Assembly (NCBI GenBank): GCA_950097015.1
Contig: CATNEN010000038.1
Span: forward strand, 31,682,001 to 31,746,000
Reading direction: 5' to 3'
Source of the DNA: Macrostomum hystrix
Lineage: Eukaryota; Animalia; Platyhelminthes
Length of the DNA stretch: 64,000 bases
Below are positions 10,802 to 48,600 of this stretch, piece by piece; within the stretch, counting starts at the first letter, position 1, and each line of letters starts with the position of its first letter. Made by a program: the position numbers and the translations under genes. The notes below the pieces were generated by a model that worked only from the letters and a program-made list of their open reading frames with translations, searched no databases and had not been told where the DNA came from.

Positions 10802-13800
10802 TTATCGAAAATCTATAGTAGCGGCGGCACTTGAGCAGCGCTCAAAAGCCCGACTGTCCGAGCTGCTCGAAGTGGCGCCCTTCGACGAGGCGGCGTATTC
10901 TCCTCCAGCCGCTGATGCAGCTGTGACGGAGCGGCCAATGTCGTTTGTACTTCTCGAAGCGTCAAGAACTTGTGGCGGCGGGGGCGGTGGCGGTGGCGGC
11001 GGTAGAAGCGGTGGCGACGGATGCCGGAAGCTGCTGACCCGCTCCGGCACTGGCGGTGGCGGCTGATAAGGCGGCTCGCCCGACAACAACAATCTGGCGG
11101 CGTCGCGCACCGCCTGTCGAATGGTCTTCAAGAAGTCGTCTCTGGCTTCGGCGGTACTGGATTGAGAATGGTTGAGTGTTCGCGTGGTTTAAGAATAAAT
11201 CCAGGACCACTAGAAGGAGTGGAAGGGATGGGAGACTACATTTCTTAGAAAAATACACTATGTAGAAAGGAAGTTTTTTCAGCACAAATTTAATGACTTT
11301 GATGACTGAAGGCGGATCAATCGCTCACCTTTTGATAATTGGGGTCAGTGGCAGAGCGCGTTAACGCGTTTGCCCCTCGCACCAAGGTCCCTAAGCTCGA
11401 TTCCGCGGCGAGGCCACATTCATTTGGGGCGCAGCCGCGGAGAGAAGGCTTAGTGGCTTGTCGTGTAATTTACGCCATTGAAGGCCAACCTCAAGGCACA
11501 GTGAGAGTGCACACTGCCTGACGATTAGAAAGTCAGGGCAGATGTACACACCTGTGTGAGTGTGTGCTCAGGAGTCAGCGGAATGGGCAGAATTGCCTCC
11601 TCGCTGGCTGCTGGTCAAGTGTCAACAAATGATGTACCGTTGCCTGCAGCCCTCTAGCAAGTATAATTATTATCATTGATCATGGCATTCTTATTTATAG
11701 CTTCATCGACTTCTGTCAAGCTTTTTAGTGAAAACATCGATTTCATATTCACTTTTTCTCAACATACCTGTGCCAGAAAAACTGATCCTGAACCAACAAA
11801 ACTACTCGTAAAGTGGACCCTTGGTAGCTCGTAGAATAAAAAAAACCTGACTTTTATTTTTTCCGGAATCACAGAATTAGCATCGTAGATATATTCAACA
11901 ATTCTCGTCGTGGTCTTGTCTGGTGGCAAAAACTACCAAATATCGGAATGCATTTTCTGCCTACTAAATTTCATCGTGTAACTATTTCTGCTATTATTGT
12001 TTATTACATTGTTAACTATTGTTGTTGAATCAATATGGATTCGTCAGAGGTTTATACAGAGAAATGGACCAATCCGTTTGGATGTACAACCCATGTAAAA
12101 TCACAGCTAGTTAGATTTTGCACTAACCTATTCGACAGTTGATACAATTTCTCCATTCTGTTATCCTCCAAAGAGGCCAGGTGCACCAGATCCCACAGGT
12201 AGGTCCGCTGGGCGTCGTTAGAGAGGCCGCAGCGGACCTGAACGTCCGTAGCCGGTATGACAGTTTGAAATCGAATCAAGTCGTAGTTTCGCATGGCGGC
12301 CTGTGAGGTAGAAACAAACTGTGGGGTGTACTGTTAGACACGATGAACTGTTAGATACGATGAACTGTTAGACACGATGAACTGTTAGACACGATGAACT
12401 GTTAGATACGATGAACTGTTAGACACGATGAACTGTTAGATACGATGAACTCTTAGATACGATGAACTGTTAGATACGATGAACTGTTAGATACGATGAA
12501 CTGTTAGACACAACGAACTCTTAGATACGATGAACTGTTAGACACGATGTACTCTTAGATACGATGAACTGTTAGACACGATGAACTGTTAAATTCGATT
12601 AATTTTTCCTTACGTCTAGTCAAAAGTGGCGAGTCCACTCACAGATAGGGCAATAAGTTTTCCCTTGGAACTTGACTACCTTTCACACGTTGAGGATAAT
12701 TAACCTACCCTGGCTGAGTCCTCGGTCGGTCTTGGTTCTTGGCAGAGCAACACAACGGCGTGGCGAAACACGAAGCAACTGGTGCACATGTGCTGCTGCT
12801 GGTCAGTCTGACCAACGCTAAGACTTTCGACAGAATTCAACCATTCGACTGTGCCAAACATTCTCAACTCGCCGATGCTCAGGTCCACGGGCTGAGGGAA
12901 ACGTTTTCAAAATTACTCTTTTGTTATGTAGCCTATTTCTGATTTCTGATTTCATTTCTGTTCCCTACTTTTGAGAAATTCAATTCAGACACGAGATCAG
13001 CCTCTAAAATCTCTCAGGTAGTCCAATGCATGAATTCCTTCAGCCTTCAAGAAACGCCTAGGGGTATCTTGTCAAACATCACCTCTTATGTATCTCCTCG
13101 GGTATATTGATAGGTAACTCCTCACGTATCTCCCCAGGTATCTGCTCATATATCTTCACAGATATATTTAGGTAACTCCTAAGTTATCTCCTCATATATC
13201 TCCTCAGGTGTCTCCTCAGGTACTCTCTCATGTATCTCCTCAGGTTTCTCCTCAGGTATGTTCTCAGTTATCTTCTGGGGTACCTTCTCAGATGTACTGT
13301 CAGGTACCTAATTTGGTATCTCCTCAGGTATCTTCTCAGGTACCTCATTCGGTATCTCCTCAGGCATCTCCTATTGTATCTTTTCAGGTATCTCCTCGGG
13401 TATTTACTTGAGTCTGCCTAGATTATAGTTTCAAATCTGGTTAGTTTTACCGGTTTGTGCGGGTAGACCTGTCGAAAAAGGTCGGCCAATTCGTCGAATG
13501 TCGCTCCGAAGTCATGCCGAATCTGCTGCATTTCGTTCACGTGACTTGCCACCGGTTGAATGCATCGAATAGCCTCTAAAATATTTTTGTGATTAATTTG
13601 TGAGTGCGGAAGTACTTGAGTGCGGAAGTACTTGAGTGCGGAAGTACTTGAGTGCGGAAGTACTTGAGTGCGGAAGTACTTGAGTGCGGAAGTACTTGAG
13701 TGCGGAAGTACTTGAATGCGGAAGTACTTGAGTGCGGAAGTACTTGAGTGCGGAAGTACTTGAGTGCGGAAGTACTTGAGTGCGGAAGTACTTGAGTGCG

Positions 13801-16800
13801 GAAGTACTTGAATGCGGAAGTACTTGAGTGCGGAAGTACTTGAGTGCGGAAGTACTTGAGTGCGGAAGTACTTGAGTGCGGAAGTACTTGAGTGCGGAAG
13901 TACTTGAGTGCGGAAGTACTTGAGTGCGGAAATACTTGAGTGCGGAAGTACTTGAGTGCGGAAGTACTTATGTAAAGTATTACAAACAACATTTCAACTT
14001 GTGTTTAAAAATGTTTAAAGCTCACCACTGAGCCGTCTCTGCTCTTCGCTACCCTGCTGTGCCAAGCTGTGCAGAGCCTCCAGTATCGCCGGGTACTTGG
14101 CTATCCTCTGCACCGGGGCCTGCATCAGCGAGTTGATGTCCGCGCCGGCCTCGCAGGCCGAAACCGACTGCAGGTGCGGATCGGCGTCACCGGATGAGCC
14201 GTTGGAGCTCTGTTGTTGGAGAAACTGCATCACTGCTGCCGTGTCACTGCCTGCAGTGTGATACAAGCGTACGACTTTTTTAAATTATGACAATAACTAC
14301 TCGTATTAGTAGTAAATTAGTTCCAACCAGGCATGGAGACCAACCCGAATCTAACAACTTGATGCAGGCGAGGCTGTGGGCGCAGAAGGCGCTGTAGAGC
14401 TTGAATTGGTCCTGATAGTGCACGAATGCGGAAGCCAGGCTTAGTAGAGATTTCTGGAATTTAAATTATTGTGCATTGTTTTTTGCGGTAAAGATAAAAC
14501 AGGACTGATGCAACACAAGAACTGACTGAACATCCCCACTGACACCTCACTCCCAGAACTGACACCCACTTTCAGAGCTGACACCTCACTTTCAGAGCTG
14601 ACACCTCACTTTCAGAGCTGACACATATTACATAATAATAATAGTAATTTCAGGAGAGCTGTGGAAAATGGCACATCATTTGGTGACAGTAGAGCCGCAG
14701 CCAGCGAAGAGGCAATTCTGCCCTTTTTGATGTCTCCTGAACACACAGATACCGAACGCAGACACATGCTCACACAAGCCCCGACTTTCTCATCGCCAGG
14801 CAGTGTACACTTCACTGGGCCTTGGAGGTTGGCCCTCAAGGGTGCAAATTGCACGACAAGCCCCCATTAAGCCTTCTCTCCGCGGCTGCGCCCCAAATGA
14901 ATGTGGCCTCGCCGCGGAATCGAGCTTAGGGACATTGGTGCGAGAGGCAAATGCGTTGACCGCTCTGCCACTCACCCCCTCCCTATTACAGAACGGACAC
15001 CCTATCAGTCTCCGCGCACCTTGACATCTCCACCGGAGGCTCCGCTGCTGCTCAAGGCGTGCAGGAACTCGGCATGAAAGGCCGCCAGCCCAGCAACCAC
15101 CTCCGCCAGCTGGCGCAGCTCCCTTGGCGGAGACGGAGGCGAGAACCAATCGCACAGCGGTTCCAGGTAGCGCACAGACAGTGCCCGCAGGCAGTCGACG
15201 TAGACTCGCTCAGTTTCTAGCAGCTCCAGCGTAGCCATTCTCAGACGATTGTCAACGGTTTGTCGGAATAACGAAGGATCACCGACGGCTGCCGGGGCGT
15301 GGGTGGACGAGGCGGATGAATTCGACTGGCACTGACTGCCAGTGTCCGGCGATGATGACACCACGTTTGCCTGGCGGTGGAGTTCAATTTGCTCTTCGTT
15401 TCATTAACTAGAAAGATTATTTTACAGGTCTTACGACCGATCACTCCCTCCCTAGGCTCTGCGACCCTCCGCTCCACTCCTGCGTACAGTCCAGACATCC
15501 ACCAACCTCACTCCCTAGGCTGTGTGACCCTCCGCTCCACTCCTGCGTACAGTCCAGACATCCACCAACCTCACTCCCTAGCCAAGCGACCCTCAGCTCC
15601 ACTCCTGCGTACACACATAATTGTCTTATATTTCAAGCGACTGAGAACCATATCTACCTGTCGCTTTAACTGTTGAGCTCGCCGGGTCGCCGATTCCCCG
15701 GCATCGATGGTTGCCGACGGCTGCAGTCTGGAAGTTCTGCCCTGCTGTATTTTTGAACCCATCAGTTGATTCTGCTGCTGCTGCTGCTGTCGACTAGACC
15801 GAACTAGCAGAGACAAACTGGCCGACTTTTCAAATAGGTCCTCAATGTAGACCATATCCAACTGAGCCACTAGTCTATCATTGACGGCCACCAGTTCGTC
15901 GCCAGGCACCAAGCCGGCCTCGTCCGCCGAGCTTCCGGGTTCGATTCCGGCTACGTAGACGCAGAGAAACTCCCTGCCGTTGGCCGGGTCGCGCTGTAGC
16001 TCAGCTTCGGCTGTCAGGCCGAAATGACGAGCCCCCGGACGCTTCGACATTCGACATAGGCGGCGCTGCTTCTCGCACAATTCAGCGAATTGTAAGTCCT
16101 TCGTGGGGAGAGCGGATGGAATGAGTGAATCCCAATGAACCTGAGTGAATCCCAATGAACCTGAGTGAATCCCAATGAACCTAAGTGAATCCCAATTAAC
16201 CTGAGTGAATCCCAATGAACCTAAGTGAATCCCAATTAACCTGAGTGAATCCCAATTAACCTGAGTGAATCCCAATGAACCTAAGTGAATCCCAATGAAC
16301 CTGAGTGAATCCCAATGAACCTAGGGTGAATCTTCTCGCAGACTAACCGGATTTTCTGCGAGTAGCAATCTGCCAGGCAAAGATACTGCCACACCATCCG
16401 GTCTCGGCCAGGTAAGATCGTAGCTGCACCAGTCCAGACCGCCGCACTCGCGACAGACAGATTGTAATAGTTCGATGACTCGGGTGGTGTCGTTTATGCC
16501 GACAATTGTGGTCTAATTGGATGATGAAAAGATTCAGATCGTTTACCTTGCCCGTACAATGGCGTCACTATAATAGCCAATTATAGCAAACAGTCAATTC
16601 CACGAAAAGCATGTCTCCCCCAGCGCGTTTTGTCAAGATAAGAGCGTCTAGTTTGTCTGATTTTGGGGTTCTATGGTCGCTGACGAGTGTACATTTGTGC
16701 TTCACTCTATCTTGTTTTCTGCGTCTGATTTTGGGGTTCTATGGTCGCTGACGAGTGTACATTTGTGCTTCACTATATCTTGTTTTCTGCGTCTGATTTT

Positions 16801-34877: not shown

Positions 34878-36742
34878 GTGAGTGAATACTAGAGTGACGG
34901 TGAGAGTGACTGCTAGAGTGACTATGAGAGTGACTGCTAGAGTGACTGTGAGAGTGAATTCTAGAGTGACTATGAGAGTGACTGCTAGAGTGACTATGAG
35001 AGTGACTGCTAGAGTGACTGTGAGAGTGAATTCTAGAGTGATTGTGAGAGTGAATTCTAGAGTGACTGTGAGAGTGAATTCTAGAGTGACTGTGAGAGTG
35101 AATACTAGAGTGATTGTGAGAGTGAATTCTAGAGTGACTGTGAGAGTGAATACTAGAGTGACTGTGAGAGTGAATGCTAGAGTAACTGTGAGAGTGAATA
35201 CTAGAGTGACAGTGAGAGTGACTACTAGGGTGACTGTGAGAGTGAATACTAGAGTGACTGTGAGAATGAATACTAGAGTGACTGTGAGAGTGAATTCTAG
35301 AGTGACTGTGAGAGTGAATGCTAGAGTGACTGTGAGAGTGAATACTAGAGTGAGAGTATTCTAGAGTGACTAGAGTGACTGTGAGAGTGAATTCTAGAGT
35401 GACTGTGAGAGTGAATACTAGTGTGACTGTGAGAGTGAATGCTAGAGTGACTGTGAGAGTGAATACTAGGGTGAGAGTATTCTAGAGTGACTAGAGTGAC
35501 TGTGAGAGTGAATTCTAGAGTGACTGTGAGAGTGAATACTAGAGTGACTGTGAGAGTGAATTCTAGAGTGACTGTGAGAGTGAATTCTAGAGTGATTGTG
35601 AGAGTGAATTCTAGAGTGACTGTGAGAGTGAATTCTAGAGTGACTGTGAGAGTGAATACTAGAGTGATTGTGAGAGTGAATTCTAGAGTGACTGTGAGAG
35701 TGAATACTAGAGTGACTGTGAGAGTGAATGCTAGAGTAACTGTGAGAGTGAATACTAGAGTGACAGTGAGAGTGACTACTAGGGTGACTGTGAGAGTGAA
35801 TACTAGAGTGACTGTGAGAGTGAATACTAGAGTGACTGTGAGAGTGAATTCTAGAGTGACTGTGAGAGTGAATACTAGAGTGACTGTGAGATTGAATTCT
35901 AGAGTGTCTGTGAGAGTGAATACTAGAGTGACTGTGAGAGTGAATGCTAGAGTGACTGTGAGAGTGAATACTAGGGTGACTGTGAGAGTGAATACTAGGG
36001 TGACTGTGAGAGTGAATACTAGAGTGACTGTGAGAGTGAATGCTAGAGTGACTGTGAGAGTGAATACTAGGGTGACTGTGAGAGTGAATACTAGGGTGAC
36101 TGTGAGAGTGAATACTAGGGTGACTGTGAGAGTGAATACTAGGGTGAGAGTATTCTAGAGTGACTAGAGTGACTGTGAGAGTGAATTCTAGAGTGACTGT
36201 GAGAGTGAATTCTAGAGTGACTGTGGGAGTGAATACTAGAGTGACTGTGAGAGTGAATTCTAGAGTGACTGTGAGAGTGAATTCTAGAGTGACTGTGAGA
36301 GTGAATACTAGAGTGACTGTGAGAGTGAATACTAGGGTGACTGTGAGAGTGAATACTAGAGTGACTGTGAGAGTGAATACTAGAGTGAGAGTATTCTAGA
36401 GTGACTGTGAGAGTGAATTCTAGAGTGACTGTGAGAGTGAATTCTAGAGTGACTGTGGGAGTGAATTCTAGAGGTACTGTGAGAGTGAATACTAGAGTGA
36501 CTGTGAGAGTGAATACTAGGGTGACTGTGAGAGTGAATACTAGAGTGAGAGTATTCTAGAGTGACTGTGAGAGTGAATTCTAGAGTGACTGTGAGAGTGA
36601 ATACTAGAGTGACTGTGAGAGTGAATTCTAGAGTGACTGTGAGAGTGAATACTAGAGTGACAGTGAGAGTGAATACTAGAGTGACTGTGAGAGTGAATTC
36701 TAGAGTGACTGTGAGAGTGAATTCTAGAGTGACTATGAGAGT
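34878..36742. repeat. 24-bp minisatellite (GAGAGTGAATWCTAGAGTGACTGT)n
   Basis: Seen directly. Confidence 0.95.
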
Positions 36743-37419
36743 AAATCTTTATAATTAAGATATTGCGCAAGTGATATCAGATGAAATACAAAATAAAGTT
36801 AGCTTAGATCAACTATGATTAACACTTATCATTGCGAGACAAATGTAAATACGAATCCAGTGAGCACAACTCAGAACCTACGAGAACTCGTATGAGTACT
36901 AGCGGCATCTTATCTAATGAAGTCTTTCAGAATCAGGCAGCCAGAAACCAGGTTGCTGAGGGCTTGTGTGCTTAAGCCTAATTGAGTCCAGCCAGATAGC
37001 TGATCAGTCAGCTGACACAGACTGGCCAAATCGATTGACCTACTGAGGCAGTTAACTTTACTCGGCCTATCAGACTTAATTCTAAATTCGAGCGGTTCAA
37101 TATCAGTAATTGAAGAGCTGCCTATGACTTGGGGCAGTGAGATTTTTACAAATAATTTAAGATTTGCGATTTCAAGCGAGACAAGTTCGTAAAATGCTAT
37201 AAATACACGTGAGATTTGGGATGCCCCGAAATGGGATAAATTTGTAGTGATGAGATTAAAGCCTTTAAAACTGTATTAAGGCTAGCTGCTGATACTACTT
37301 GTGCGAGTAAGTAGTTGCATATATATTCTGAAAATTATCAGAAATTATTCTCAAATTTATTATCTCAGGGCGATTGTGGAATCTGTCCAGAGTTTTGTTG
37401 GGATTTAACAAAACTTTTA

Positions 37420-39420
37420 GTAGGATCTGACTGAAATTGTGGGATCAGACTGAAATTGTGGCATCTGACTGAAATTGTGGGATCTGACTGTAGTTGTGGG
37501 ATCTGACTGAAAATATGGGATCTGACTGAAATTGTGGGATCTGACTGAAATTGTGGGATCTGACTGAAATTGTGGGATCTGACTGTAGTTGTGGGATCTG
37601 ACTGAAATTGTGGGGTCTGACTGAAATTGTGGGATCTGACTGAAATTGTGGCATCTGACTGAAATTGTGGGATCTGACTGTAGTTGTGGGATCTGACTGA
37701 AATTGTGGGATCTGACTGTAGTTGTGGGATCTGACTGAAATTGTGGGATCTGACTAAAATTGTGGGATCTGACTGAAATTGTGGGATCTGACTGAAATTG
37801 TGGGATCTGACTGTAGTTGTGGGATCTGACTAAAATTGTGGGATCCGACTGAAAATATGGGATCTGACTGAAATTGTGGCATCTGACTGAAATTGTGGCA
37901 TCTGACTGAAATTGTGGGATCTGACTGTAGTTGTGGGATCTGACTGAAATTGTGGGATCTGACTGAAAATATGGGATCTGACTGAAATTGTGGCATCTGA
38001 CTGAAATTGTGGGATCTGACTGAAATTGTGGGATCTGACTGTAGTTGTGGGATCTGACTGAAAATATGGGATCTGACTGAAATTGTGGCATCTGACTGAA
38101 ATTGTGGGATCTGACTGAAATTGTGGGATCTGACTGTAGTTGTGGGATCTGACTGAAATTGTGGGATCTGACTGAAATTGTGGGATCTGACTGAAATTGT
38201 GGCATCTGACTGAAATTGTGGGATCTGACTGTAGTTGTGGGATCTGACTGAAATTGTGGGATCTGACTGAAATTGTGGGATCTGACTGAAATTGTGGCAT
38301 CTGACTGTAGTTGTGGGATCTGACTGAAATTGTGGGATCTGACTGAAATTGTGGGATCTGACTGAAATTGTGGGATCTGACTGAAATTGTGGGATCTGAC
38401 TGAAATTGTGGGATCTGACTGAAATTGTGGCATCCGACTGAAATTGTGGGATCTGACTGAAATTGTGGCATCTGACTGAAATTGTGGGATCTGACTGTAG
38501 TTGTGGGATCTGACTGAAATTGTGGGATCTGACTGAAAATATGGGATCTGACTGAAATTGTGGCATCTGACTGAAATTGTGGCATCTGACTGAAATTGTG
38601 GGATCTGACTGTAGTTGTGGGATCTGACTGAAAATATGGGATCTGACTGAAATTGTGGCATCTGACTGAAATTGTGGCATCTGACTGAAATTGTGGGATC
38701 TGACTGTAGTTGTGGGATCTGACTGAAATTGTGGGATCTGACTGAAATTGTGGGATCTGACTGAAATTGTGGCATCTGACTGAAATTGTGGGATCTGACT
38801 GTAGTTGTGGGATCTGACTGAAATTGTGGGATCTGACTGAAATTGTGGGATCTGACTGAAATTGTGGCATCTGACTGTAGTTGTGGGATCTGACTGAAAT
38901 TGTGGGATCTGACTGTAGTTGTGGGATCTGACTGAAATTGTGGGATCTGACTGAAATTGTGGGATCTGACTGAAATTGTGGCATCTGACTGAAATTGTGG
39001 GATCTGACTGTAGTTGTGGGATCTGACTGAAATTGTGGGATCTGACTGAAATTGTGGGATCTGACTGAAATTGTGGCATCTGACTGTAGTTGTGGGATCT
39101 GACTGAAATTGTGGGATCTGACTGAAATTGTGGGATCTGACTGAAATTGTGGGATCTGACTGAAATTGTGGGATCTGACTGAAATTGTGGGATCTGACTG
39201 AAATTGTGGCATCCGACTGAAATTGTGGGATCTGACTGAAATTGTGGGATCTGACTGTAGTTGTGGGATCTGACTGAAATTGTGGGATCTGACTGAAATT
39301 GTGGGATCTGACTGAAATTGTGGGATCTGAATGAAATTGTGGGATCTGACTGAAATTTTGGGATCTGACTGTAGTTGTGGGATCTGACTGTAGTTGTGGG
39401 ATCTGACTGTAGTGGTGATC
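37420..39420. repeat. 19-bp minisatellite (GGGATCTGACTGAAATTGT)n
   Basis: Seen directly. Confidence 0.95.
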
Positions 39421-39698
39421 CAACTATAAGCTTTGAGAATCGGAGTTCAAAATTGGGCATATTTCAGCTAGAAAATGCTTTTTAAGCAAGTTGACAGGAG
39501 CAAGTTTGAGCAATGATAGCAATGACAGGGTAAATATTTTTTGAGTCGTTGAAACGAAGTCCACTTGAGAGTTGAGCTAACTTAAATTTCAAAAAATAAA
39601 TAATTAAGTATGGCTAACGCACGTTCGTATGTACGGGCCATAAATACTTTTGGTTAGCTAGCCAAGTAACTCACTAAACGGAAAAAGAGCAAGCAAGA

Positions 39699-41881
39699 AT
39701 GCTGAAATTCTTCTTTAAAATTTTACTACTAATTATCTATATTTGCGTTAAGTTTGATCAAAGCAGCGGCATTGTCTGTCGTCGACCGTTTGTTGCCGTC
39801 AGCAACAGCAGCAGCATCAGCAAGTGTCTGCTGCCACCGAATGCGTCTCACAGGTATAATATAATGATAATCATAATTGCAGGAGGGCTGCGCGCAATGG
39901 CACATCATTTGGTGACACTAGACCCGCAGCCAGCGAGGAGGCAATTCTGCCCATTCCGCTGACTCCTGAGCACACACGCACACAGATACTGTACACAGAC
40001 ACACACGCACACAGATACTGTACACAGACACACACGCACACAGATACTGTACACAGACACACACGCACACAGATACTGTACACAGACACACACGCACACA
40101 GATACTGTACACAGACACACACGCACACAGATACTGTACACAGACACACACGCACACAGATACTGTACACAGACACACACGCACACAGATACTGTACACA
40201 GACACACACGCACACAGATACTGTACACAGACACACACGCACACAGATACTGTACACAGACACACACGCACACAGATACTGTACACAGACACACACGCAC
40301 ACAGATACTGTACACAGACACACACGCACACAGATACTGTACACAGACACACACGCACACAGATACTGTACACAGACACACACGCACACAGATACTGTAC
40401 ACAGACACACACGCACACAGATACTGTACACAGACACACACGCACACAGATACTGTACACAGACACACACGCACACAGATACTGTACACAGACACACACG
40501 CACACAGATACTGTACACAGACACACACGCACACAGATACTGTACACAGACACACACGCACACAGATACTGTACACAGACACACACGCACACAGATACTG
40601 TACACAGACACACACTCACACAGATACTATACACAGACAGACACGCACACAGATACTGTACACAGACACACACGCACACGGGGCGCAAATTGCACGACAA
40701 GCCGACCAAGCCTTTCTCTTTCTTGGGGTCGGTGGCAGAGCGGTTAACGCGTTTGCCTCTCGCACCAAGGTCCCTGAGCTCGATTCCGTGGCGAGGCCAC
40801 TTTCATTTGGGGCTCAGTCGCGGAGAGAAGGCTTGGGGGCTTGTCGTGCAATTTACGCCCTTGAGGGCCAACTTCCAAGGCACAGTGAAATGTACACTGC
40901 CTGACGATGAGAAAGTCAGTGCAGATGTACACACCTGTGTGAGCGTGTGCCTGCATACGGTATCTGTGTGCGTGTGTGCTCAGGAGTCAGCGAAATGGGC
41001 AGAATTGCCTCCTCGATGGCTGCGGGTCTAGTGTCACCAAATGATGTGCCATTGCCCGCAGCCCTCCTGAAATTATTTTTGTTATTATCATTTTTTCATT
41101 AAGCCTTTCTCTCCGCGGCTGTGTCTCAAATGTCTCAAATGAAAGTGGCCTCGCCGCGGAATCGAGCTTAGGGACCTACTACCTAGGTGCGAGAGGCAAA
41201 CGCGTTAACCGCTCTATCACCGACCCCTTTCCCAGGTTGACCTGGTGTGCTGCGAATCGTTATTGCTGGAATCTCGGCGCTCGCATGATCACCGACCCCA
41301 ACGCGGCTGTCAATCTTCTTCTAGGAGGCGACAAGCCGCTGTGGTCTTGGCTGGGAGTGTCCGATCTTGCCGAGGAACGCGGCAAAGAGCGCTCCGGTTG
41401 GCGTTTAGTTGTCATTGGCAAGGCCGACTCCGAGACGCAGTTCCCAGCCGACTATGCCGGATGGGGCCAGGAGCCAAACGACGCTGTGACGGGCTGGGAG
41501 AATTGCATCGAAGTCAATACGATCAGCGGCCAGCTCAACGACAAGACCTGCTCAGATTTAAATTCATTCATTTGCGAAGCAATCATCGGCCAGAAGGAGT
41601 TGTCTTCGTTGAACAGTTTAGGCGTCTGGCGGCGGGTTGATTTCAATCGGCGACATTACAACGCGCAATCGGAGTATTGCCATTCGGGGGACAGTCAGGT
41701 AGATTCTATTCAACGATGCCTTCAACTGGCTGTCAGCCACTCATATCCTAGTAGCGGACTATTGTTCAACAGGCGGTCCGGAGCCTGCAGGCTTGTTGAG
41801 TTCACCGGGGATGTAGAAGCTGAACAGAGCATTGAACTCGATCCAGACTGGATAAAAGTACTCCTGAAGGATTCTCAATGA
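39699..41881 (+). CDS. Secreted C-type lectin domain protein (EPN motif) with a possible degenerate C-terminal PAN/apple-like segment, 2 exons
   Basis: Exon 1 39699-39853 carries a hydrophobic signal-like N-terminus and ends CAG|GT. Exon 2 41236-41881 is in phase (AG+G=Arg). Motifs: LTWCAANRYC, WLGVSD, WGQEPND, ENC, LNDKTC, FICE. Confidence 0.88.
39971..40680. repeat. Near-perfect 29-bp minisatellite inside a SINE (CACACACGCACACAGATACTGTACACAGA)n, ~24 copies
   Basis: Seen directly; corresponds to the SINE's internal GT-rich segment. Confidence 0.97.
40725..41100 (+). mobile_element. SINE family A inner copy nested in the outer copy, 12-bp TSD AAGCCTTTCTCT
   Basis: Full head-to-tail copy. 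The TSD is at 40708-40719 and 41101-41112. Confidence 0.9.
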
Positions 41882-41981
41882 AGCAGTTGTTTTTTCTATT
41901 AAATAAAAACACCAAAATGAATCGAGAATCGACATTTTTGTCCATCTCATTTTGTCAATCGTTTTTAATTTTCTAAAGATC

Positions 41982-42395
41982 TCTCATGAGATTCCAACAG
42001 ATCTCATGAGATTCCAACAGATCTCATGAGATTCCAACAGATCTCATGAGATTCCAACAGATCTCATGAGATTCCAACAGATCTCATGAGATTCCAACAG
42101 ATCTCATGAGATTCCAACAGATCTCATGAGATTCCAACAGATCTCATGAGATTCCAACAGATCTCATGAGATTCCAACAGATCTCATTAGATTCCAACAG
42201 ATCTCAAGATTCCAGCAGATCTCATGAGATTCCAGCAGAACTCATGAGATTCCAGCAGATCTCATGAGATTTCAACAGATCTCATGAGATTCCAACAGAT
42301 CTCATGAGATTCCAGCAGATCTCATGAAATTCCAGCAGAACTCATGAGATTCCAACAGATCTCATGAGATTCCAGCAGAACTCATGAGATTCCAC
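41982..42395. repeat. 20-bp minisatellite (ATCTCATGAGATTCCAACAG)n with a 12-bp palindrome per unit
   Basis: Seen directly. Confidence 0.95.
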
Positions 42396-42695: not shown

Positions 42696-45600
42696 ATGGA
42701 TTCAGTATCAATTTGGAAACAGATATTATTAACCCTGCTTCTAGTTTGTCTATCCATTCTGCTGCCTCTAGCAGTCTTACTAGTGATAGCTTATTTCTAC
42801 GCGCTTAGAAATCGGTCCAAGGTGGTTGACATTGCCAGCCAGCTGCGTGACGATCAGTTCAAAGGCAGGACGGTGCTACTGACTGGCGGCAGCAGTGGCA
42901 TTGGTATGGAGTGCGCTGTGCAGCTCGCTAGCAGGGGCGCTACCGTCTGGCTGCTAGGGAGGTGAGAATTGAGTTTTATCGTGAGGATTTTACCGGATTC
43001 TACCCCCGAGGATTCTAACTCCGAGGATTCTACCCCCGAGGATTCTAACTCCGAGGATTCTACCCCCGAGGACTCTACCCCCCGAGGACTCTACCCCCCG
43101 AGGATTCTAACCCCCGAGGATTCTACCCCCGAGGATTCTACCCACGAGGATTCTAACCCCCGAGGATTCTAATCCCCGAGGATTCTAACCCTCGAGGATT
43201 CTACCTCCGAGGATTCTACCCCCCGAGGATTCTATCCCTCGAGGATTCTACCCCCGAGGATTCTATCCCCCGAGGATTCTACCCCCGAGGATTCTATCCC
43301 CCGAGGATTCTACCCCCGAGGATTCTACCCACGAGGATTCTAACCCCCGAGGATTCTAATCCCCGAGGATTCTAACCCTCGAGGATTCTACCTCCGAGGA
43401 TTCTACCCCCCGAGGATTCTATCCCTCGAGGATTCTACCCCCGAGGATTCTATCCCCGAGGATTCTACCCCCCGAGGATTATATCCCCGAGGATTCTACC
43501 CCCCCCCCGAGGATTCTAATCCTCGAGGATTCTACCCCGAGGATTCTACCCCGAGGATTCTATCCCCGAGGATTCTACCTCCGAGGATTCTAACCCTCGA
43601 GGATTCTACCTCCGAGGATTCCAACCCTGAGGATTCACCATGAGGATTCTACCTTCGAGAATTCTTACCTTAAGAGTTATTCCATCAAGAATTCTACCTC
43701 ATTCTGACCTAAGCATTCTACCCTCACAGGTTAGGATTTGAGGACTTAAGGATTTAATCCCCTTAAAGGCAGAATTTTTCCAGGTAATTCTACCCTGAGG
43801 ATTTCACTCCTAGACAGACTCTACCCAAACTACTCAGATCGCTAGATCGTGGCGAAGAGGCGGTGAGGGAAATCCGGAATCGAACCCAGAACGGCCGGCT
43901 GCTAGTTCGCCAGCTCGATTTGTCCAGCCTGATTCAAGTGGCTCGATTCTGTGACCAATTCTGCGCGGAAGAATCCAATGCCCAGATTGACATTCTGGTG
44001 AACAATGCCGGCGTATTCTCGCCGCCCTACAGTCGCACTGTCGAAGGTCTAGATCCCAGTTTAGCCAGCAATCACCTGGGTCACTACCTCTTAACCTGTC
44101 TGCTGATGGTTCGCGGCCGTCTGTCAACAAATGCCAAACTGATTCTGGTCACTGGGGCCATGTACAAAGACGGTTGCCGAGACGCTGCTGCCTGGAATCA
44201 ACTGCCAGCTTGTGAAGCTGATTATAGCGGTTTGCAGGTGATTATTTTTAAATCTGATAATCCTCCTAATCCTACTCAAATAATCACTATAACCGCAAAT
44301 CTCGTTAAAATACTCATTGAATCCTAAATCTCATATTGGAAAATCATTTAAATCCCAAATGCCCTTCAGAACATCCTTGATATATAAAAAATCCCATTCA
44401 CAGAATCATTGAAATCCCTAATCCCAAGTAATTATTCACAACATTTCTTAAATCAACACAGATAATACTTAAAATCTCAAATCCTTACTAATAGAATCTC
44501 AAATCATTACTAATAGAATCTCAAATCCTTACTAATAGAATCTCAAATCATTACTAATAGAATCTCAAATCCTTACTAATAGAATCTCAAATCCTTACCA
44601 ACAGAATCTCAAATCATTACTAATAGAATCTCAAATCATTTCTAATAGAATCTCAAATCCTTACTAATAGAATCTCAAATCATTACTAATAGAATCTCAA
44701 ATCCTTACCAACAGAATCTCAAATCATTACTAATAGAATCTCAAATCATTTCTAATAGAATCTCAAATCCTTACTAATAGAATCTCAAATCCTTACCAAT
44801 AGAATCTCAAATCATTACCAATAGAATCTCAAATCATTACCAATAGAATCTCAAATCATTACTAATAGAATCTCAAATCATTTCTAATAGAATCTCAAAT
44901 CCTTACTAATAGAATCTCAAATCATTACTAATAGAATCTCAAATCATTACTAATAGAATCTCAAATCCTAACTAATAGAATCTCAAATCATTACTAATAG
45001 AATCTCAAATCATTACTAATAGAATCTCAAATCCTAACTAATAGAATCTCAAATCATTACTAATAGAATCTCAAATCCTTACCAATAGAATCTCAAATCA
45101 TTACCAATAGAATCTCAAATCATTACCAATAGAATCTCAAATCCTTACTAATAGAATCTCAAATCATTACTAATAGAATCTCAAATCATTACCAATAGAA
45201 TCTCAAATCATTACCAATAGAATCTCAAATCATTACTAATAGAATCTCAAATCCTTACTAATAGAATCTCAAATCCTTACTAATAGAATCTCAAATCATT
45301 TCTAATAGAATCTCGAATCATTTCTAATAGAATCTCAAATCATTTCTAATAGAATCTCAAATCATTTCTAATAGAATCTCAAATCATTACTAATAGAATC
45401 TCAAATCCTTACTAATAGAATCTCAAATCATTTCTAATAGAATCTCAAATCCTTACTAATAGAATCTCAAATCATTTCTAATAGAATCTCAAATCATTTC
45501 TAATAGAATCTCAAATCATTACTAATAGAATCTCAAATCATTTCTAATAGAATCTCAAATCATTTCTAATAGAATCTCAAATCATTACTAATAGAATCTC

Positions 45601-48600
45601 AAATCCTTACTAATAGAATCTCAAATCATTTCTAATAGAATCTCAAATCCTTACCAACAGAATCTCAAATCCTTACTAATAGAATCTCAAATCCTTACTA
45701 ATAGAATCTCAAATCATTACTAATAGAATCTCAAATCGTTACTAATAGAATCTCAAATCATTACTAATAGAATCTCAAATCATTTCTAATAGAATCTCAA
45801 ATCATTACTAATAGAAAATCAAATCCTAACTAATAGAATCTCAAATCCTAACTAATAGAATCTCAAATCCTTACTAATAGAATCTCAAATCCTTACTAAT
45901 AGAATCTCAAATCATTTCTAATAGAATCTCAAATCATTTCTAATAGAATCTCAAATCATTACTAATAGAATCTCAAATCCTTACTAATAGAATCTCAAAT
46001 CATTTCTAATAGAATCTCAAATCATTACTAATAGAATCTCAAATCCTTACTAATAGAATCTCAAATCATTACTAATAGAATCTCAAATCCTTACTAATAG
46101 AATCTCAAATCATTACAAATAGAATCTCAAATCCTTACTAATAGAATCTCAAATCCTTACTAATAGAATCTCAAATCCTTACCAATAGAATCTCAAATCC
46201 TTACTAATAGAATCTCAAATCCTTACTAATAGAATCTCAAATCCTTACTAATAGAATCTCAAATCCTTACTAATAGAATCTCAAATCCTTACCAATAGAA
46301 TCTCAAATCCTTACTAATAGAATCTCAAATCCTTACTAATAGAATCTCAAATCCTTACTAATAGAATCTCAAATCCTTACTAATAGAATCTCAAATCCTT
46401 ACTAATAGAATCTCAAATCCTTACTAATAGAATCTCAAATCCTTACTAATAGAATCTCAAATCCTTACCAATAGAATCTCAAATCCTTACTAATAGAATC
46501 TCAAATCCTTACCAACAGAATCTCAAATCCTTACTAATAGAATCTCAAATCCTTACTAATAGAATCTCAAATCATTACTAATAGAATCTCAAATCATTAC
46601 TAATAGAATCTCAAATCCTTACTAATAGAATCTCAAATCCTTACCAATAGAATCTCAAATCCTTACTAATAGAATCTCAAATCCTTACCAACAGAATCTC
46701 AAATCCTTACTAATAGAATCTCAAATCCTTACCAATAGAATCTCAAATCCTTACTAATAGAATCTCAAATCCTTACTAATAGAATCTCAAATCCTTACCA
46801 ATAGAATCTCAAATCCTTACTAATAGAATCTCAAATCCTTACCAACAGAATCTCAAATCCTTACTAATAGAATCTCAAATCCTTACCAATAGAATCTCAA
46901 ATCCTTACTAATAGAATCTCAAATCCTTACTAATAGAATCTCAAATCCTTACTAATAGAATCTCAAATCCTTACTAATAGAATCTCAAATCCTTACTAAT
47001 AGAATCTCAAATCCTTACCAACAGAATCTCAAATCCTTACTAATAGAATCTCGAATCCTTACTAATAGAATCTCGAATCCTTACTAATAGAATCTCGAAT
47101 CCTTACTAATAGATTCTCAAATCCTTACTAATAGAATCTCGAATCCTTACTAATAGAATCTCAAATCATTTCTAATAGAATCTCAAATCCTTACTAATAG
47201 AATCTCAAATCATTACTAATAGAATCTCAAATCCTTACTAATAGAATATCAAATCCTTACTAATAGATTCTCAAATCCTTACTAATAGAATCTCAAATCC
47301 TTACTAATAGAATCTCGAATCCTTACTAATAGATTCTCAAATCCTTACTAATAGAATCTCGAATCCTTACTAATAGAATCTCAAATCATTTCTAATAGAA
47401 TCTCAAATCCTTACTAATAGAATCTCAAATCATTACTAATAGAATCTCAAATCCTTACTAATAGAATATCAAATCCTTACTAATAGAATCTCGAATCCTT
47501 ACTAATAGATTCTCAAATCCTTACTAATAGAATCTCGAATCCTTACTAATAGAATCTCAAATCATTACTAATAGAATCTCAAATCCTTACTAATAGAATA
47601 TCAAATCATTACTAATAGAATCTCAAATGTATTAAATCCCATTTAGAGAATCACAAAAGCAGTCTCAAATATAACTCTAAATTAAGCTTTAATGTCTCAA
47701 AGTTAGCGGCCCTCCAGCCCCCCAGTTCTCTGATTGGTTAAACTATTTCTCTCGTGTTTTTCTTGCCCTCCTTTACCCTGCCGCGACTCCGCTTAGCCCT
47801 GACCCCAACCTCCCCCACCCAACCTCCCCAATCCCGTGCGGCACGTGATTGGTCAGTCCCGAATTATAATTTGAAACGAATCTAGAGCATTTAATGTGCT
47901 CACGGATGATAATAAAAATGTTAATAATTTCAGGAGGGCTGCTGGCAATGGCACACCATTTAGTGACACTAGACCCGCAGCCAGCAAGGAGGCAGTTCTG
48001 TCCATTTCGCTGACTCCTGAGCACACACGCACACAGGTGTGTACATATGTCCTGACTTTCTCATCGTCGTGCAGTGTACACTCTCACTGTGCCTTGGAGG
48101 TTGGCCCTCAAGGGCGTAAATTGCACGACAAGCCCCCAAGCCTTCTCTCCGCGACTGAGCCCCAAATGAAAGTGGCCTCGCCGCGGAATCGAGCTCAGGG
48201 ACCTTGGTGCGAGAGGCAAACGCGTTAACCGCTAATCTACTCACATTTTGCCAAAAGCCGAGCGCACATTGTCGATGAGGATTAAAACATTCAAGTACGA
48301 GCTAATGAAAGCTTTTTTTAAACTTTAACATCTTGCAGGAAGAAGAAAAACTTTTTGCCAAGCGAAAATAACTTTTTAGAAACAGTCTGATAAACCAGAT
48401 AGTCTACACGTAAGACATAAAGAGAAAAAGCAACAAAATAATAATGTGTCTTGTCCCACTTAAAGGACAAAGTAATGCGAACATATTGTTTTGACGGTAG
48501 AAAAATAATAAGTCACTTTCTGCGCAGAAAAGTTAAGCAGACCAGACAGCAAGTGCACGAAATGTTACAGACTTATTCGAACAAATCAATTCGATCTTTC

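What the first reader, a model, noticed from the sequence alone, without database searches (positions are those of the whole stretch)
39846..41237. An intron that is a SINE: apparent precise intron creation by insertion at a CAG|GT target site
Seen: the only intron of the lectin gene (39854-41235) begins with GT followed directly by the AT-rich tail of an antisense family-A SINE. It ends with the SINE's tRNA head (..CGACCCC, 41227) followed by just TTTCCCAG. The flanks are TCTCACAG|GT (39846-39855) and TTTCCCAG|GT (41228-41237), 8/10 identical and placed where a target-site duplication would lie. Splicing from the first GT to the second AG regenerates one uninterrupted copy (..CAC AGG TTG ACC.., H-R-L-T-W). 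One of the two differences (A>C) adds a pyrimidine to the acceptor side. Only ~10 nt of the intron are not attributable to SINE sequence. Established: TSD duplication of AG|GT is a known route of intron gain, mostly described for DNA-transposon introners. Inference: here a Pol III retroposon acted as an intron generator, and the family may do so elsewhere in the genome.
Basis: partly seen in the sequence, partly recalled or inferred. Interest (0 to 1): 0.9.

Follow-up and report, generated by a model that had tools for sequence, protein, structure and literature searches.

The report
SINE insertion turned into lectin intron
In the flatworm Macrostomum hystrix, a short jumping element (a SINE) landed inside the coding sequence of a normally intron-free lectin gene, and the 10-base duplication it made put AG|GT at both ends, so it can be cut out as an intron; this route of intron gain is known but rarely documented, and the exact splice here is not yet proven by RNA.

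Summary
The intron 39854-41235 is an antisense tRNA-like SINE. It is flanked by TCTCACAG|GT and TTTCCCAG|GT, which match at 8 of 10 positions and fit the family's 10-16 bp target-site duplications.

The outer SINE also carries a nested, oppositely oriented second SINE with its own 12-bp duplication. It also carries a 24-copy 29-bp array grown from a SINE-internal motif.

The genome is Macrostomum hystrix Machtx_v2. All 18 best paralogs of this lectin family (more than 100 loci) are single open frames. Two of them read ..CAG AGG CTG ACC TGG.. (Q-R-L-T-W) straight across the homologous site. A pre-existing intron is therefore practically excluded.

Both coding pieces are intact, and variants seen in other samples are mostly synonymous. 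Contigs from RNA-like runs match exon 2 only from 41236, the predicted acceptor edge. The genomic run instead continues into the SINE.

Several things remain unproven or count against the reading:
- No read across the donor-acceptor junction was seen.
- The exact 41236 edge is not what a ..CAG|G join predicts.
- The donor is weak.
- A 125-bp hairpin may mask the branch site.

AGGT is not enriched beside SINE heads, so these introns arise by chance plus selection, not by targeting. The scan has already noted ten or more similar cases elsewhere in this genome.

The parts
39699..39853 (+). Exon 1 coding part: ATG, signal-peptide-like N-terminus, C-x2-P-F and K-C motifs, N-A-S site; ends with AG of the split codon (phase 2)
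   Evidence: ORF. The C..PF motif aligns to paralog HMM positions 22-31 (weak, E 0.05). N-x-S-x-[R]-L-T-W is in register with paralogs L008/L014.
39846..39855 (+). Left copy of the outer SINE's target-site duplication, TCTCACAG|GT; supplies the donor GT
   Evidence: Family TSDs are 10-16 bp.
39854..41235 (+). The intron (1382 nt), GT..AG
   Evidence: The acceptor edge 41235|41236 coincides with the edge of RNA-like contigs. The donor is inferred.
39856..39998 (-). Outer SINE, 3' part: degenerate (ATT)n tail (39856-39879) and body (consensus positions 366-227)
   Evidence: 96.4% identical to the consensus of 29 young copies. Inverted repeat with 40935-41088.
39971..40679 (.). 29-bp tandem array, 24.4 copies, 99% matches; the unit is a SINE-internal segment (CACACACGCACACAGATACTGTAC..)
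   Evidence: TRF; the repeat finder. It replaces consensus positions about 137-226 of the outer SINE.
40680..40719 (-). Outer SINE, middle piece (consensus 136-99), cut by the nested insertion
40708..40719 (+). Left TSD of the nested SINE (AAGCCTTTCTCT), followed by 5 extra nt (TTCTT)
40725..41100 (+). Nested full-length sense SINE (head 40725-40800, (ATT)n-like tail to 41100)
   Evidence: 95.6% identical to the young consensus with no gaps. 29 genomic copies are 93-95% identical to it.
41101..41112 (+). Right TSD of the nested SINE (AAGCCTTTCTCT)
   Evidence: An X1 contig covering 41059-41163 without differences spans this junction.
41101..41227 (-). Outer SINE head part (A/B-box region), antisense; ends ..CACCGACCCC
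   Evidence: 8 mismatches and 4 gaps over 110 consensus positions.
41205..41232 (+). Putative branch site TTAAC (A at 41208, 27 nt before the AG) and a 79%-pyrimidine tract; the first 19 of its 24 nt come from the antisense SINE head, the last 5 from the right TSD copy
   Evidence: Read from the sequence; inference only. Predicted to lie inside a roughly 125-bp duplex with the nested SINE's head.
41228..41237 (+). Right copy of the outer SINE's TSD, TTTCCCAG|GT; supplies the acceptor AG
   Evidence: 8 of 10 positions identical to the left copy.
41236..41881 (+). Exon 2: third base of the split codon, then 214 codons (C-type lectin domain plus a family-specific Cys-containing C-terminal domain), stop at 41879-81
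   Evidence: Pfam Lectin_C, E 4.8e-7. 155 bits to the paralog HMM, positions 48-248. Present in runs X1-X5.
41902..41907 (+). AATAAA poly(A) signal-like hexamer, 21 nt after the stop
   Evidence: inference.
39821..39829 (+). Alternative in-frame donor CAA|GTGTCT (exon would end at 39823); would delete the C-L-L-P-P-N-A-S-H stretch, including a Cys
   Evidence: Raised only as a possible explanation of the exact 41236 edge.

Best explanation
An old copy of an abundant tRNA-like SINE inserted, in antisense orientation, into the coding sequence of a previously intronless C-type-lectin-like gene of Macrostomum hystrix. The mechanism was target-primed reverse transcription, and the target was ..GCG TCTCACAGGT TGACC.. 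.

The 10-bp target-site duplication left AG|GT on both sides of the element. The left copy gives the donor GT, followed by the A/T-rich antisense tail. The right copy gives the acceptor AG. The antisense head supplies a TTAAC branch-like motif 27 nt upstream and most of a C/U-rich tract.

Removing the sequence from the first GT to the second AG restores exactly the pre-insertion reading frame (..N-A-S-H-R-L-T-W-C..). The gene therefore survived, and the insert became its only intron.

Later a second SINE nested into the first one and a 29-bp SINE-internal unit amplified 24-fold. This grew the intron to 1382 nt.

Shown: the anatomy, the TSD, the intronless state of the paralogs, intact coding pieces, and an RNA-like contig edge at the acceptor. 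Inferred: use of the 39853|39854 donor, the branch site, and the order of events.
For: Anatomy and TSD. Family TSDs are 10-16 bp and the tail is (ATT)n. The focal copy reads, in sense, ACCTGGGAAA|head ... tail|ACCTGTGAGA.

Genome identity: G000 has 220,453,370 bp in 42 contigs, which equals Machtx_v2.

Intronless family: 103 matches, mostly single open frames of 245-290 aa. The 18 best paralogs each run from Met through the signal peptide, CPAPF..C..N-x-S..W-C in one frame. L008 and L014 read TCG CAG AGG CTG ACC TGG across the site, against the focal flanks TCT CAC AG|G TTG ACC TGG.

Colinearity: exon 2 maps to paralog HMM positions 48-248, and the exon 1 C..PF motif maps to positions 22-31.

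Age and constraint: the outer SINE is about 5% and the nested one 4.4% from the young consensus. Under neutral decay of that size, my simulation gives P(no stop) of about 0.15-0.20. The separate Poisson estimate gives P(no frameshift) of about 0.10-0.25.

Variants in other samples: 4 synonymous changes, 3 conservative replacements and one in-frame 3-nt deletion.

RNA-like evidence: X2 and X3 have 41-63 Mb of contigs. Their SINE-to-unique depth ratio is about 80 times lower than in the genomic run X1. The source project holds only one short-read gDNA sample beside many RNA samples. Contigs from X2 and X3 match exon 2 only from 41236 onward, whereas the X1 contig continues into the SINE to 41187.
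Against: - No read or contig was seen joining 39853 to 41236. No run on record as RNA was listed, and the single read-laying run could not include exon 1 because of the 29-bp array.
- A cis-spliced or empty-site sequence (..CACAG|G) shares CAG with the intron end and should match from 41233, not 41236. The exact edge suggests at least one upstream partner that does not end in G (see the notebook entry under 'unexplained').
- About 1600 nt of the X2 contig are unaccounted for.
- The donor CAG|GTATAA matches the metazoan consensus at only 4 of 7 scored positions. An alternative in-frame donor, CAA|GTGTCT, scores the same.
- The putative branch site and most of the pyrimidine tract are predicted to be buried in a roughly 125-bp duplex with the nested SINE's head (MFE -321 kcal/mol, z -19).
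- Exon 1's similarity to the family is statistically weak (E 0.05).
- The age estimate mixes subfamily differences with post-insertion change.
Confidence: 0.65

Rival explanations
1. The SINE insertion is real, but the insert is not removed as predicted. The gene would then be a disrupted or decaying copy. Alternatively, it would be expressed only as other forms: an alternative donor at 39823, a 5'UTR donor, spliced-leader trans-splicing onto the 41236 acceptor, or intron retention. The AG|GT symmetry would then be a coincidence without function.
For: - The junction was never observed.
- The RNA-like contigs' edge at exactly 41236 does not fit a ..CAG|G join.
- The donor is weak and an equally scoring in-frame alternative exists.
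- 10-20% of M. hystrix genes are SL trans-spliced (PMC10468722).
- A long duplex is predicted over the branch region.
- AGGT next to SINE heads occurs at chance frequency.
Against: - Both coding pieces are intact despite roughly 5% divergence of the insert.
- The conserved Cys and the N-x-S register with paralogs are kept only by the predicted junction.
- Variants are mostly synonymous and the one indel is in frame.
- Exon 2 is present in RNA-like runs without the adjoining SINE head.
- An SL ending in ..ATG would also not give an edge at exactly 41236.
Confidence: 0.27
2. A short intron already existed at this position and the SINE landed inside it. The AT-rich start and the TTTCCCAG end would be remnants of that intron.
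For: Another agent judged one other SINE-intron case in this genome to be of this kind (s1-843772; unverified).
Against: - All 18 best paralogs, and most of the 103 family matches, are uninterrupted at this site.
- After subtracting SINE sequence, only GT and TTTCCCAG remain (10 nt), and both belong to the TSD.
- The 24-nt AT-rich start matches the family's (ATT)n tail in length and motif.
Confidence: 0.03
3. The flanking direct repeats come from another process, such as double-strand-break repair or a small tandem duplication containing AGGT, and the SINE sequence arrived independently.
For: DSB repair and AGGT tandem duplication are recognised intron-gain models (PMC3443670).
Against: - The repeats abut both termini of the SINE exactly.
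- Their length (10 bp) lies within the family's TSD range.
- The tail-to-TSD and TSD-to-head geometry is the same as in 25 other copies.
Confidence: 0.02

Closest known systems
Intron gain by transposon insertion into AGGT, with the target-site duplication giving both splice sites (model reviewed by Yenerall & Zhou 2012, PMC3443670; cases listed there from Oryza, Zea, Drosophila, Oikopleura)
   Same: The geometry is exactly that of the model: AG|GT is duplicated on both sides of the insert, and splicing restores the original coding sequence.
   Different: The insert here is a Pol III-type SINE moved by LINE machinery in a flatworm. The element also appears to contribute the branch-like motif and most of the pyrimidine tract. 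The intron later grew through a nested SINE and a minisatellite. Splicing is not yet shown directly.
Introners: TE families that create introns on a genomic scale (Gozashti et al. 2025 PNAS, PMC12130899: 1,093 families in 201 species; about 82% TIR DNA transposons, about 5% non-LTR retrotransposons)
   Same: A repeated mobile element makes up an intron in a coding exon. TSD-derived splice sites are used. Other agents' notes report further cases in the same genome.
   Different: That paper's text mentions no SINE and no flatworm. This family has thousands of ordinary non-genic copies and no AGGT target preference. It therefore looks like an ordinary SINE that occasionally yields a spliceable insertion, not a specialised introner. 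Genome-scale intron creation was not tested here.
Rice catalase intron attributed to a retroposon insertion (Iwamoto et al. 1998, cited as reference 54 in PMC3443670)
   Same: It is listed there as evidence for intron gain by transposon insertion in Oryza. From my own memory, which I did not check, the insert was SINE-like.
   Different: It is a plant gene. I could not read that paper, so the details are unverified.
Alu exonisation in primates (antisense Alu supplies a pyrimidine tract and AG)
   Same: An antisense SINE provides splice-acceptor-proximal signals. This rests on my own knowledge and was not tested here.
   Different: The outcome is the opposite: Alu pieces become exons inside existing introns, whereas here a SINE inside an exon becomes an intron.

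Membership tests
SINE (non-autonomous non-LTR retroposon, tRNA-derived) | Short, non-coding and highly repeated | tested here: met
   About 366-nt consensus. 2,466 first-look candidates in the genome, of which the 40 scored are 92-95% identical. Five heads in this 64-kb window. SINE-to-unique depth in the genomic run is of the order of 1e4.
SINE (non-autonomous non-LTR retroposon, tRNA-derived) | Variable-length target-site duplications and a simple-repeat or A-rich 3' tail (TPRT hallmarks); 5'-truncated copies | tested here: met
   TSDs of 10-16 bp in 25 of 31 full-length copies examined, (ATT)n tails, and often 1-4 extra nt at the 5' junction. Truncated copies at 47906-48233 and in L040.
SINE (non-autonomous non-LTR retroposon, tRNA-derived) | tRNA-derived head with internal Pol III A and B boxes | tested here: inconclusive
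   TGGCAGAGCGG and AGYTCGATTCC match the textbook A-box and B-box consensus at about 10 of 11 positions each (my reading). ARAGORN finds no tRNA. The Rfam tRNA model gives no hit even at E<=10. The fold is not better than shuffles.
SINE (non-autonomous non-LTR retroposon, tRNA-derived) | Partner LINE sharing the 3' end | not tested
U2-type GT-AG spliceosomal intron | GT..AG termini in a phase that keeps the reading frame | tested here: met
   GT at 39854-55 and AG at 41234-35, phase 2. The flanks join to the paralog-like N-x-S-x-R-L-T-W-C.
U2-type GT-AG spliceosomal intron | Branch site and polypyrimidine tract upstream of the AG | tested here: inconclusive
   TTAAC lies 27 nt upstream and a 79% pyrimidine tract is present. 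Both are motif-level only, and both are predicted to sit within a long duplex.
U2-type GT-AG spliceosomal intron | Removal from mature RNA at exactly these sites | tested here: inconclusive
   RNA-like contigs of X2 and X3 match only from 41236, while the genomic X1 contig runs into the SINE. The donor side was not covered, and the edge is 3 nt off what a ..CAG|G join predicts.
Introner (intron-generating TE family) | Many introns of one genome consist of copies of the same element | not testable with these tools
   There is no annotation and no further genome letters were available. The only support is unverified notes of other agents reporting ten or more cases. None of the 29 random young copies sits in an evident exon. 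The in-window copy at 14632-14978 lies inside a larger intron of a Tiam-like gene.
Introner (intron-generating TE family) | Insertion absent from homologous, uninterrupted sites | tested here: met
   Paralogs only. No ortholog was available.
Introner (intron-generating TE family) | Target or sequence specialisation for splicing | tested here: not met
   AGGT within 4-14 nt of the head end occurs at 56 sites, against 46 (TGGA), 57 (ACCT) and 57 (GATG). The base before AGGT shows no pyrimidine excess (27 of 56).
C-type lectin-like domain protein | Lectin_C domain above the Pfam threshold | tested here: met
   PF00059, 30.9 bits against a cut-off of 22.6, E 4.8e-7, residues 1-114 of exon 2.

The most novel reading that the evidence does not exclude
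This SINE family may be a genuine retroposon 'introner' of Macrostomum. Antisense copies would arrive carrying a ready branch site (TTAAC from the A-box region) and a C/U-rich end. Their (AAT)n tail would give an A/T-rich donor context. Any insertion whose 10-16-bp TSD happens to contain AG|GT in a coding exon would then be spliceable at once. Older-subfamily sense copies would offer GG|GTGAGT in the head. Chance hits (about 4% of insertions carry AGGT in the TSD zone), filtered by selection, would have added many introns to this genome, including in otherwise intronless gene families.
Probability: 0.35. Interest if true: 0.8.

Novelty: new member of a known kind. Interest (0 to 1): 0.55.

Why it matters
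How new spliceosomal introns arise is a long-standing question. Clean cases in which both the inserted element and the uninterrupted homologous site can be seen are rare in animals. Known introners are mostly DNA transposons of protists, fungi and a few marine animals.

A Pol III SINE that yields spliceable insertions in a laboratory flatworm would give a tractable system. M. hystrix has an inbred line, a genome, and RNA-seq and Iso-Seq data. That system could address a question the 2012 review left open: why some insertions are spliced, and whether the cause lies in targeting, in the element's sequence, or in chance plus selection.

This locus adds three things:
- a gene family that is otherwise intronless, so the polarity (gain, not loss) is clear;
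- evidence that AGGT is not a preferred target;
- an example of how such an intron then grows, by a nested SINE and a minisatellite.

Tried and rejected

2. The look-up of sequencing runs listed no run on record as RNA. That X2-X5 are RNA is my inference.

3. The search for homologous proteins with exon 2 returned nothing at E<=1e-10. The search of protein representatives found only distant relatives, the best at 1e-21. No ortholog was therefore available for an empty-site test, and paralogs had to serve.

4. The two exons were always handled as separate references.

5. A genome-wide census of SINE copies with AGGT in the TSD, tested for spanning ORFs, could not be done. Only site counts could be compared.

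6. Split lectin paralogs were checked for further family-A insertions. None interrupts a coding sequence. One paralog (L051) has a 1.3-kb interruption that is not family A.

7. The in-window SINE at 14632-14978 was tested as a possible second SINE intron. It lies about 38 nt inside a larger intron of a Tiam-like RhoGEF gene, so it is not a replicate.

8. A MITE or foldback reading of the inverted heads was rejected. Single copies have no terminal inverted repeats, and TSD length varies. The inverted repeat arises from nesting of two oppositely oriented SINEs.

9. The species' own splice-site consensus was not derived. The donor was scored only against the general metazoan consensus.
Full report
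**What is there**

An ORF starts at ATG 39699 and runs to ..TCT CAC AG at 39853. GT follows at 39854-55. The sequence from 41228 reads TTTCCCAG|GT, and TTG ACC TGG.. opens a 214-codon frame that ends at 41881. The split codon is AG|G, so the intron is phase 2.

Exon 2 carries a Pfam C-type lectin domain (PF00059, E 4.8e-7).

**Anatomy of the intron**

The intron is more complex than 'a SINE'. Other copies in the window (11341-11677 on the plus strand, 14632-14978 on the minus strand, 47906-48233 on the minus strand) and 29 genomic copies define the element. In sense it reads GGGGTCGGTGGCAGAGCGGTTAACGCG..(about 366 nt)..CCCTCCTGCA(ATT)n.

Measured against that element, the intron consists of the following parts:
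- 39856-39998: the 3' part of an antisense copy (tail 39856-79), 96.4% identical to the young consensus.
- 39971-40679: a 29-bp array of 24 copies at 99% identity. Its unit is a SINE-internal segment. It replaces about 90 nt of the SINE body.
- 40680-40719: a further antisense piece of the same copy.
- 40725-41100: a complete second SINE in sense orientation. It is flanked by its own 12-bp duplication, AAGCCTTTCTCT (40708-19 and 41101-12).
- 41101-41227: the antisense head of the first copy.

So there is an outer antisense SINE, later hit by a nested SINE and by a minisatellite expansion.

Contigs of the genome-like short-read run X1 cover 41059-41163 and 41187-41793 without a difference. The junctions are therefore real.

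**Is it a SINE, and is the 10-mer a TSD?**

In 25 of 31 full-length copies examined I found flanking duplications of 10-16 bp. The tails are (ATT)n, and there are often 1-4 extra bases at the 5' junction. Truncated copies exist. These are the hallmarks of LINE-mediated retroposition.

In sense orientation the focal copy reads ..ACCTGGGAAA|GGGGTCGG ... tail|ACCTGTGAGA... This is a 10-bp duplication with two differences, at the short end of the family range. For an insert about 5% diverged, that number of differences is what one expects.

The head has A- and B-box-like motifs. However, neither ARAGORN nor the Rfam tRNA model recognises it. 'tRNA-derived' is therefore plausible but not demonstrated.

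**Which genome**

G000 has 220,453,370 bases in 42 contigs. These are exactly the figures given for assembly Machtx_v2 of Macrostomum hystrix, inbred line SR1 (Wiberg et al. 2023, PMC10468722, supplementary Table S2). The species name first reached me as a lead from other agents' notes.

**Gain or pre-existing intron?**

Exon 2 finds 103 matches in the genome. Most are single open frames of 245-290 aa. The 18 best paralogs each encode Met, signal peptide, C-P-x-P-F..C..N-x-S..W-C-S-A-N-R-x-C in one uninterrupted frame.

A profile of these paralogs places exon 2 at positions 48-248 and the exon 1 C..PF motif at positions 22-31. The exon 1 match is weak (E 0.05).

Anchored on the W-C motif, the focal N-A-S-H-[R]-L-T-W is in exact register with N-M-S-Q-R-L-T-W of L014. 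At the DNA level, L008 and L014 read TCG CAG AGG CTG ACC TGG, where the focal flanks read TCT CAC AG|G TTG ACC TGG.

The homologous site is thus uninterrupted throughout the family. Nothing of the intron is left once SINE and TSD are removed. I therefore consider a pre-existing intron practically excluded. The caveat is that the closest paralog is only about 40% identical, and no ortholog could be found.

**Is it spliced?**

This is the weak point. No run on record as RNA was listed.

X1 behaves as genomic DNA. It has 197 Mb of contigs, a SINE-to-unique depth ratio of about 3e6 to 81, and its contig runs from exon 2 into the SINE head.

X2 and X3 behave differently:
- They have only 41 and 63 Mb of contigs, although the depth at this locus is 10.9 and 3.7.
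- Their SINE-to-unique depth ratio is about 80 times lower than in X1.
- They differ from the reference at about 1% of exon-2 positions.
- In the source project, every M. hystrix sample other than the SR1 DNA samples is RNA. These include single wild-caught worms.

I therefore take X2 and X3 to be RNA of wild worms. This is an inference, because the run ids are coded.

In both runs the contig that carries exon 2 stops matching exactly at 41236, the predicted first base of exon 2. This fits use of the acceptor.

Two things do not fit the simple prediction. First, a join to exon 1 (..CACAG) or an empty allele would share CAG with the intron end, so the match should start at 41233. A spliced leader ending in ATG should give 41235. 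Second, about 1,600 nt of the X2 contig lie somewhere I could not see.

An upstream partner not ending in G would explain the edge. One candidate is the alternative in-frame donor CAA|GTGTCT at 39823|39824, which scores the same as CAG|GTATAA. However, that donor would delete a conserved Cys and the N-x-S site. I leave this unexplained (notebook).

**Indirect evidence that the gene stayed functional after the insertion**

- The outer and nested SINEs are about 5% and 4.4% from the consensus of young copies.
- If the coding pieces had decayed neutrally by that amount, my simulation gives no stop with probability 0.15-0.20. The separate Poisson estimate gives no frameshift with probability 0.10-0.25. 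Jointly this is a few percent.
- The family's conserved cysteines are retained.
- The seven substitutions seen in X2 and X3 are four synonymous and three conservative changes, and the one indel is 3 nt and in frame.

This evidence is suggestive, not conclusive. Part of the 5% may be subfamily difference rather than post-insertion change.

**How it would work**

The TSD supplies the two dinucleotide pairs. The element seems to supply most of the rest of the acceptor:
- The antisense A-box region gives TTAAC, with its A 27 nt before the AG.
- The antisense head end (..CCGCTCTATCACCGACCCC), continued by the TTTCC of the right TSD copy, gives a 79% pyrimidine tract.
- The antisense tail gives an A/T-rich start after the GT.

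All of this is at motif level. Against it, the nested inverted SINE is predicted to pair with the outer head in a duplex of about 125 bp that reaches to 8 nt from the AG (MFE -321 kcal/mol, z -19). Such a duplex could hinder recognition of the branch site.

**Does the family target AG|GT?**

No. Exact head ends followed within 4-14 nt by AGGT occur 56 times in the genome. The control tetramers TGGA, ACCT and GATG occur 46, 57 and 57 times. The base before AGGT shows no pyrimidine excess.

Spliceable insertions would therefore be chance events (about 4% of insertions) that selection lets through. They are not the product of a specialised introner.

**Elsewhere in the genome**

Other agents of this scan report ten or more SINE-as-intron cases in the same genome, and one case judged to be an insertion into an older intron. 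These are unverified leads.

None of the 29 random young copies lies in an evident exon. The SINE at 14632-14978 sits inside a larger intron of a Tiam-like RhoGEF gene.

**Comparison with what is known**

The AGGT/TSD transposon model is established as a proposal with indirect support in Oryza, Zea, Drosophila and Oikopleura (PMC3443670). The latest introner survey lists non-LTR retrotransposons as about 5% of classified families, but its text mentions neither SINEs nor flatworms (PMC12130899). I found no paper on SINEs or introners in Macrostomum.

This locus is therefore a new member of a known kind. It is valuable for its clear polarity (an otherwise intronless family) and for showing later growth of the intron. 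It still lacks the junction read.

**Procedural note**

Exons were treated separately, by reference.

Noticed in passing
window 37423-39409; 41982-42394; 42995-43665; 36000-36746: The lectin gene is boxed in by long minisatellites: 19-bp x 105 just upstream of its putative promoter, 20-bp x 21 just after its 3' end, and 15-bp and 24-bp arrays nearby. Together with the 29-bp array inside the intron, this suggests a locally high rate of tandem-repeat expansion.
   Followed up: no
window 40725-40840 with 41100-41227; 39861-40014 with 40935-41088: The two oppositely oriented SINEs give the pre-mRNA two long complementary pairs (154 nt at 91%, and about 125 nt nearly perfect) in a crossing arrangement. 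This is a strong candidate source of double-stranded RNA and a possible modifier of splicing.
   Followed up: partly
window 14632-14978 (minus strand), with the exon ending near 15017: A family-A SINE in sense orientation sits about 38 nt downstream of the donor (AAG|GTGCGC) of an intron that splits the DH domain of a Tiam-like RhoGEF gene, with CC-Ex, PDZ and RhoGEF Pfam hits. Heads of this older subfamily start GGGGTGAGT, which is a consensus 5' splice site.
   Followed up: partly
L051 (G000:C34:4374800-4378800), minus strand: One lectin paralog is interrupted by about 1.3 kb between the lectin domain and the C-terminal domain. The insert is not family A. The upstream edge lies in a tandemly duplicated GTGTGCCAGGTGGGTTCC motif, which contains CAG|GT. 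This may be another insertion- or duplication-made intron.
   Followed up: partly
G000 contigs C38 (about 26.9-32.2 Mb), C39, C3, C25, C7; loci L002-L020: There are more than 100 mostly intronless genes of about 250 aa. Each has a signal peptide, a C-type lectin domain and a conserved Cys-containing C-terminal domain without a Pfam match. They are clustered in arrays. Only distant relatives exist in the public protein libraries, so this looks like a lineage-specific expansion.
   Followed up: partly
window 41236 (runs X2, X3): RNA-like contigs end or stop matching at exactly 41236 rather than 41233. One of them has about 1,600 further letters of unknown origin. This could point to an alternative donor, trans-splicing or a different wild allele.
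   Followed up: partly
window 41800-41960 (run X1): Contigs of all four runs end between 41793 and 41853. The genomic run shows zero depth beyond 41808, although the region is unique in the assembly. The cause is unknown; it may be filtering, a polymorphism or nearness to the 20-bp array.
   Followed up: no
window 39640-39646: An ATAAATA motif lies 59 nt upstream of the ATG. It is a possible TATA box of the lectin gene.
   Followed up: no
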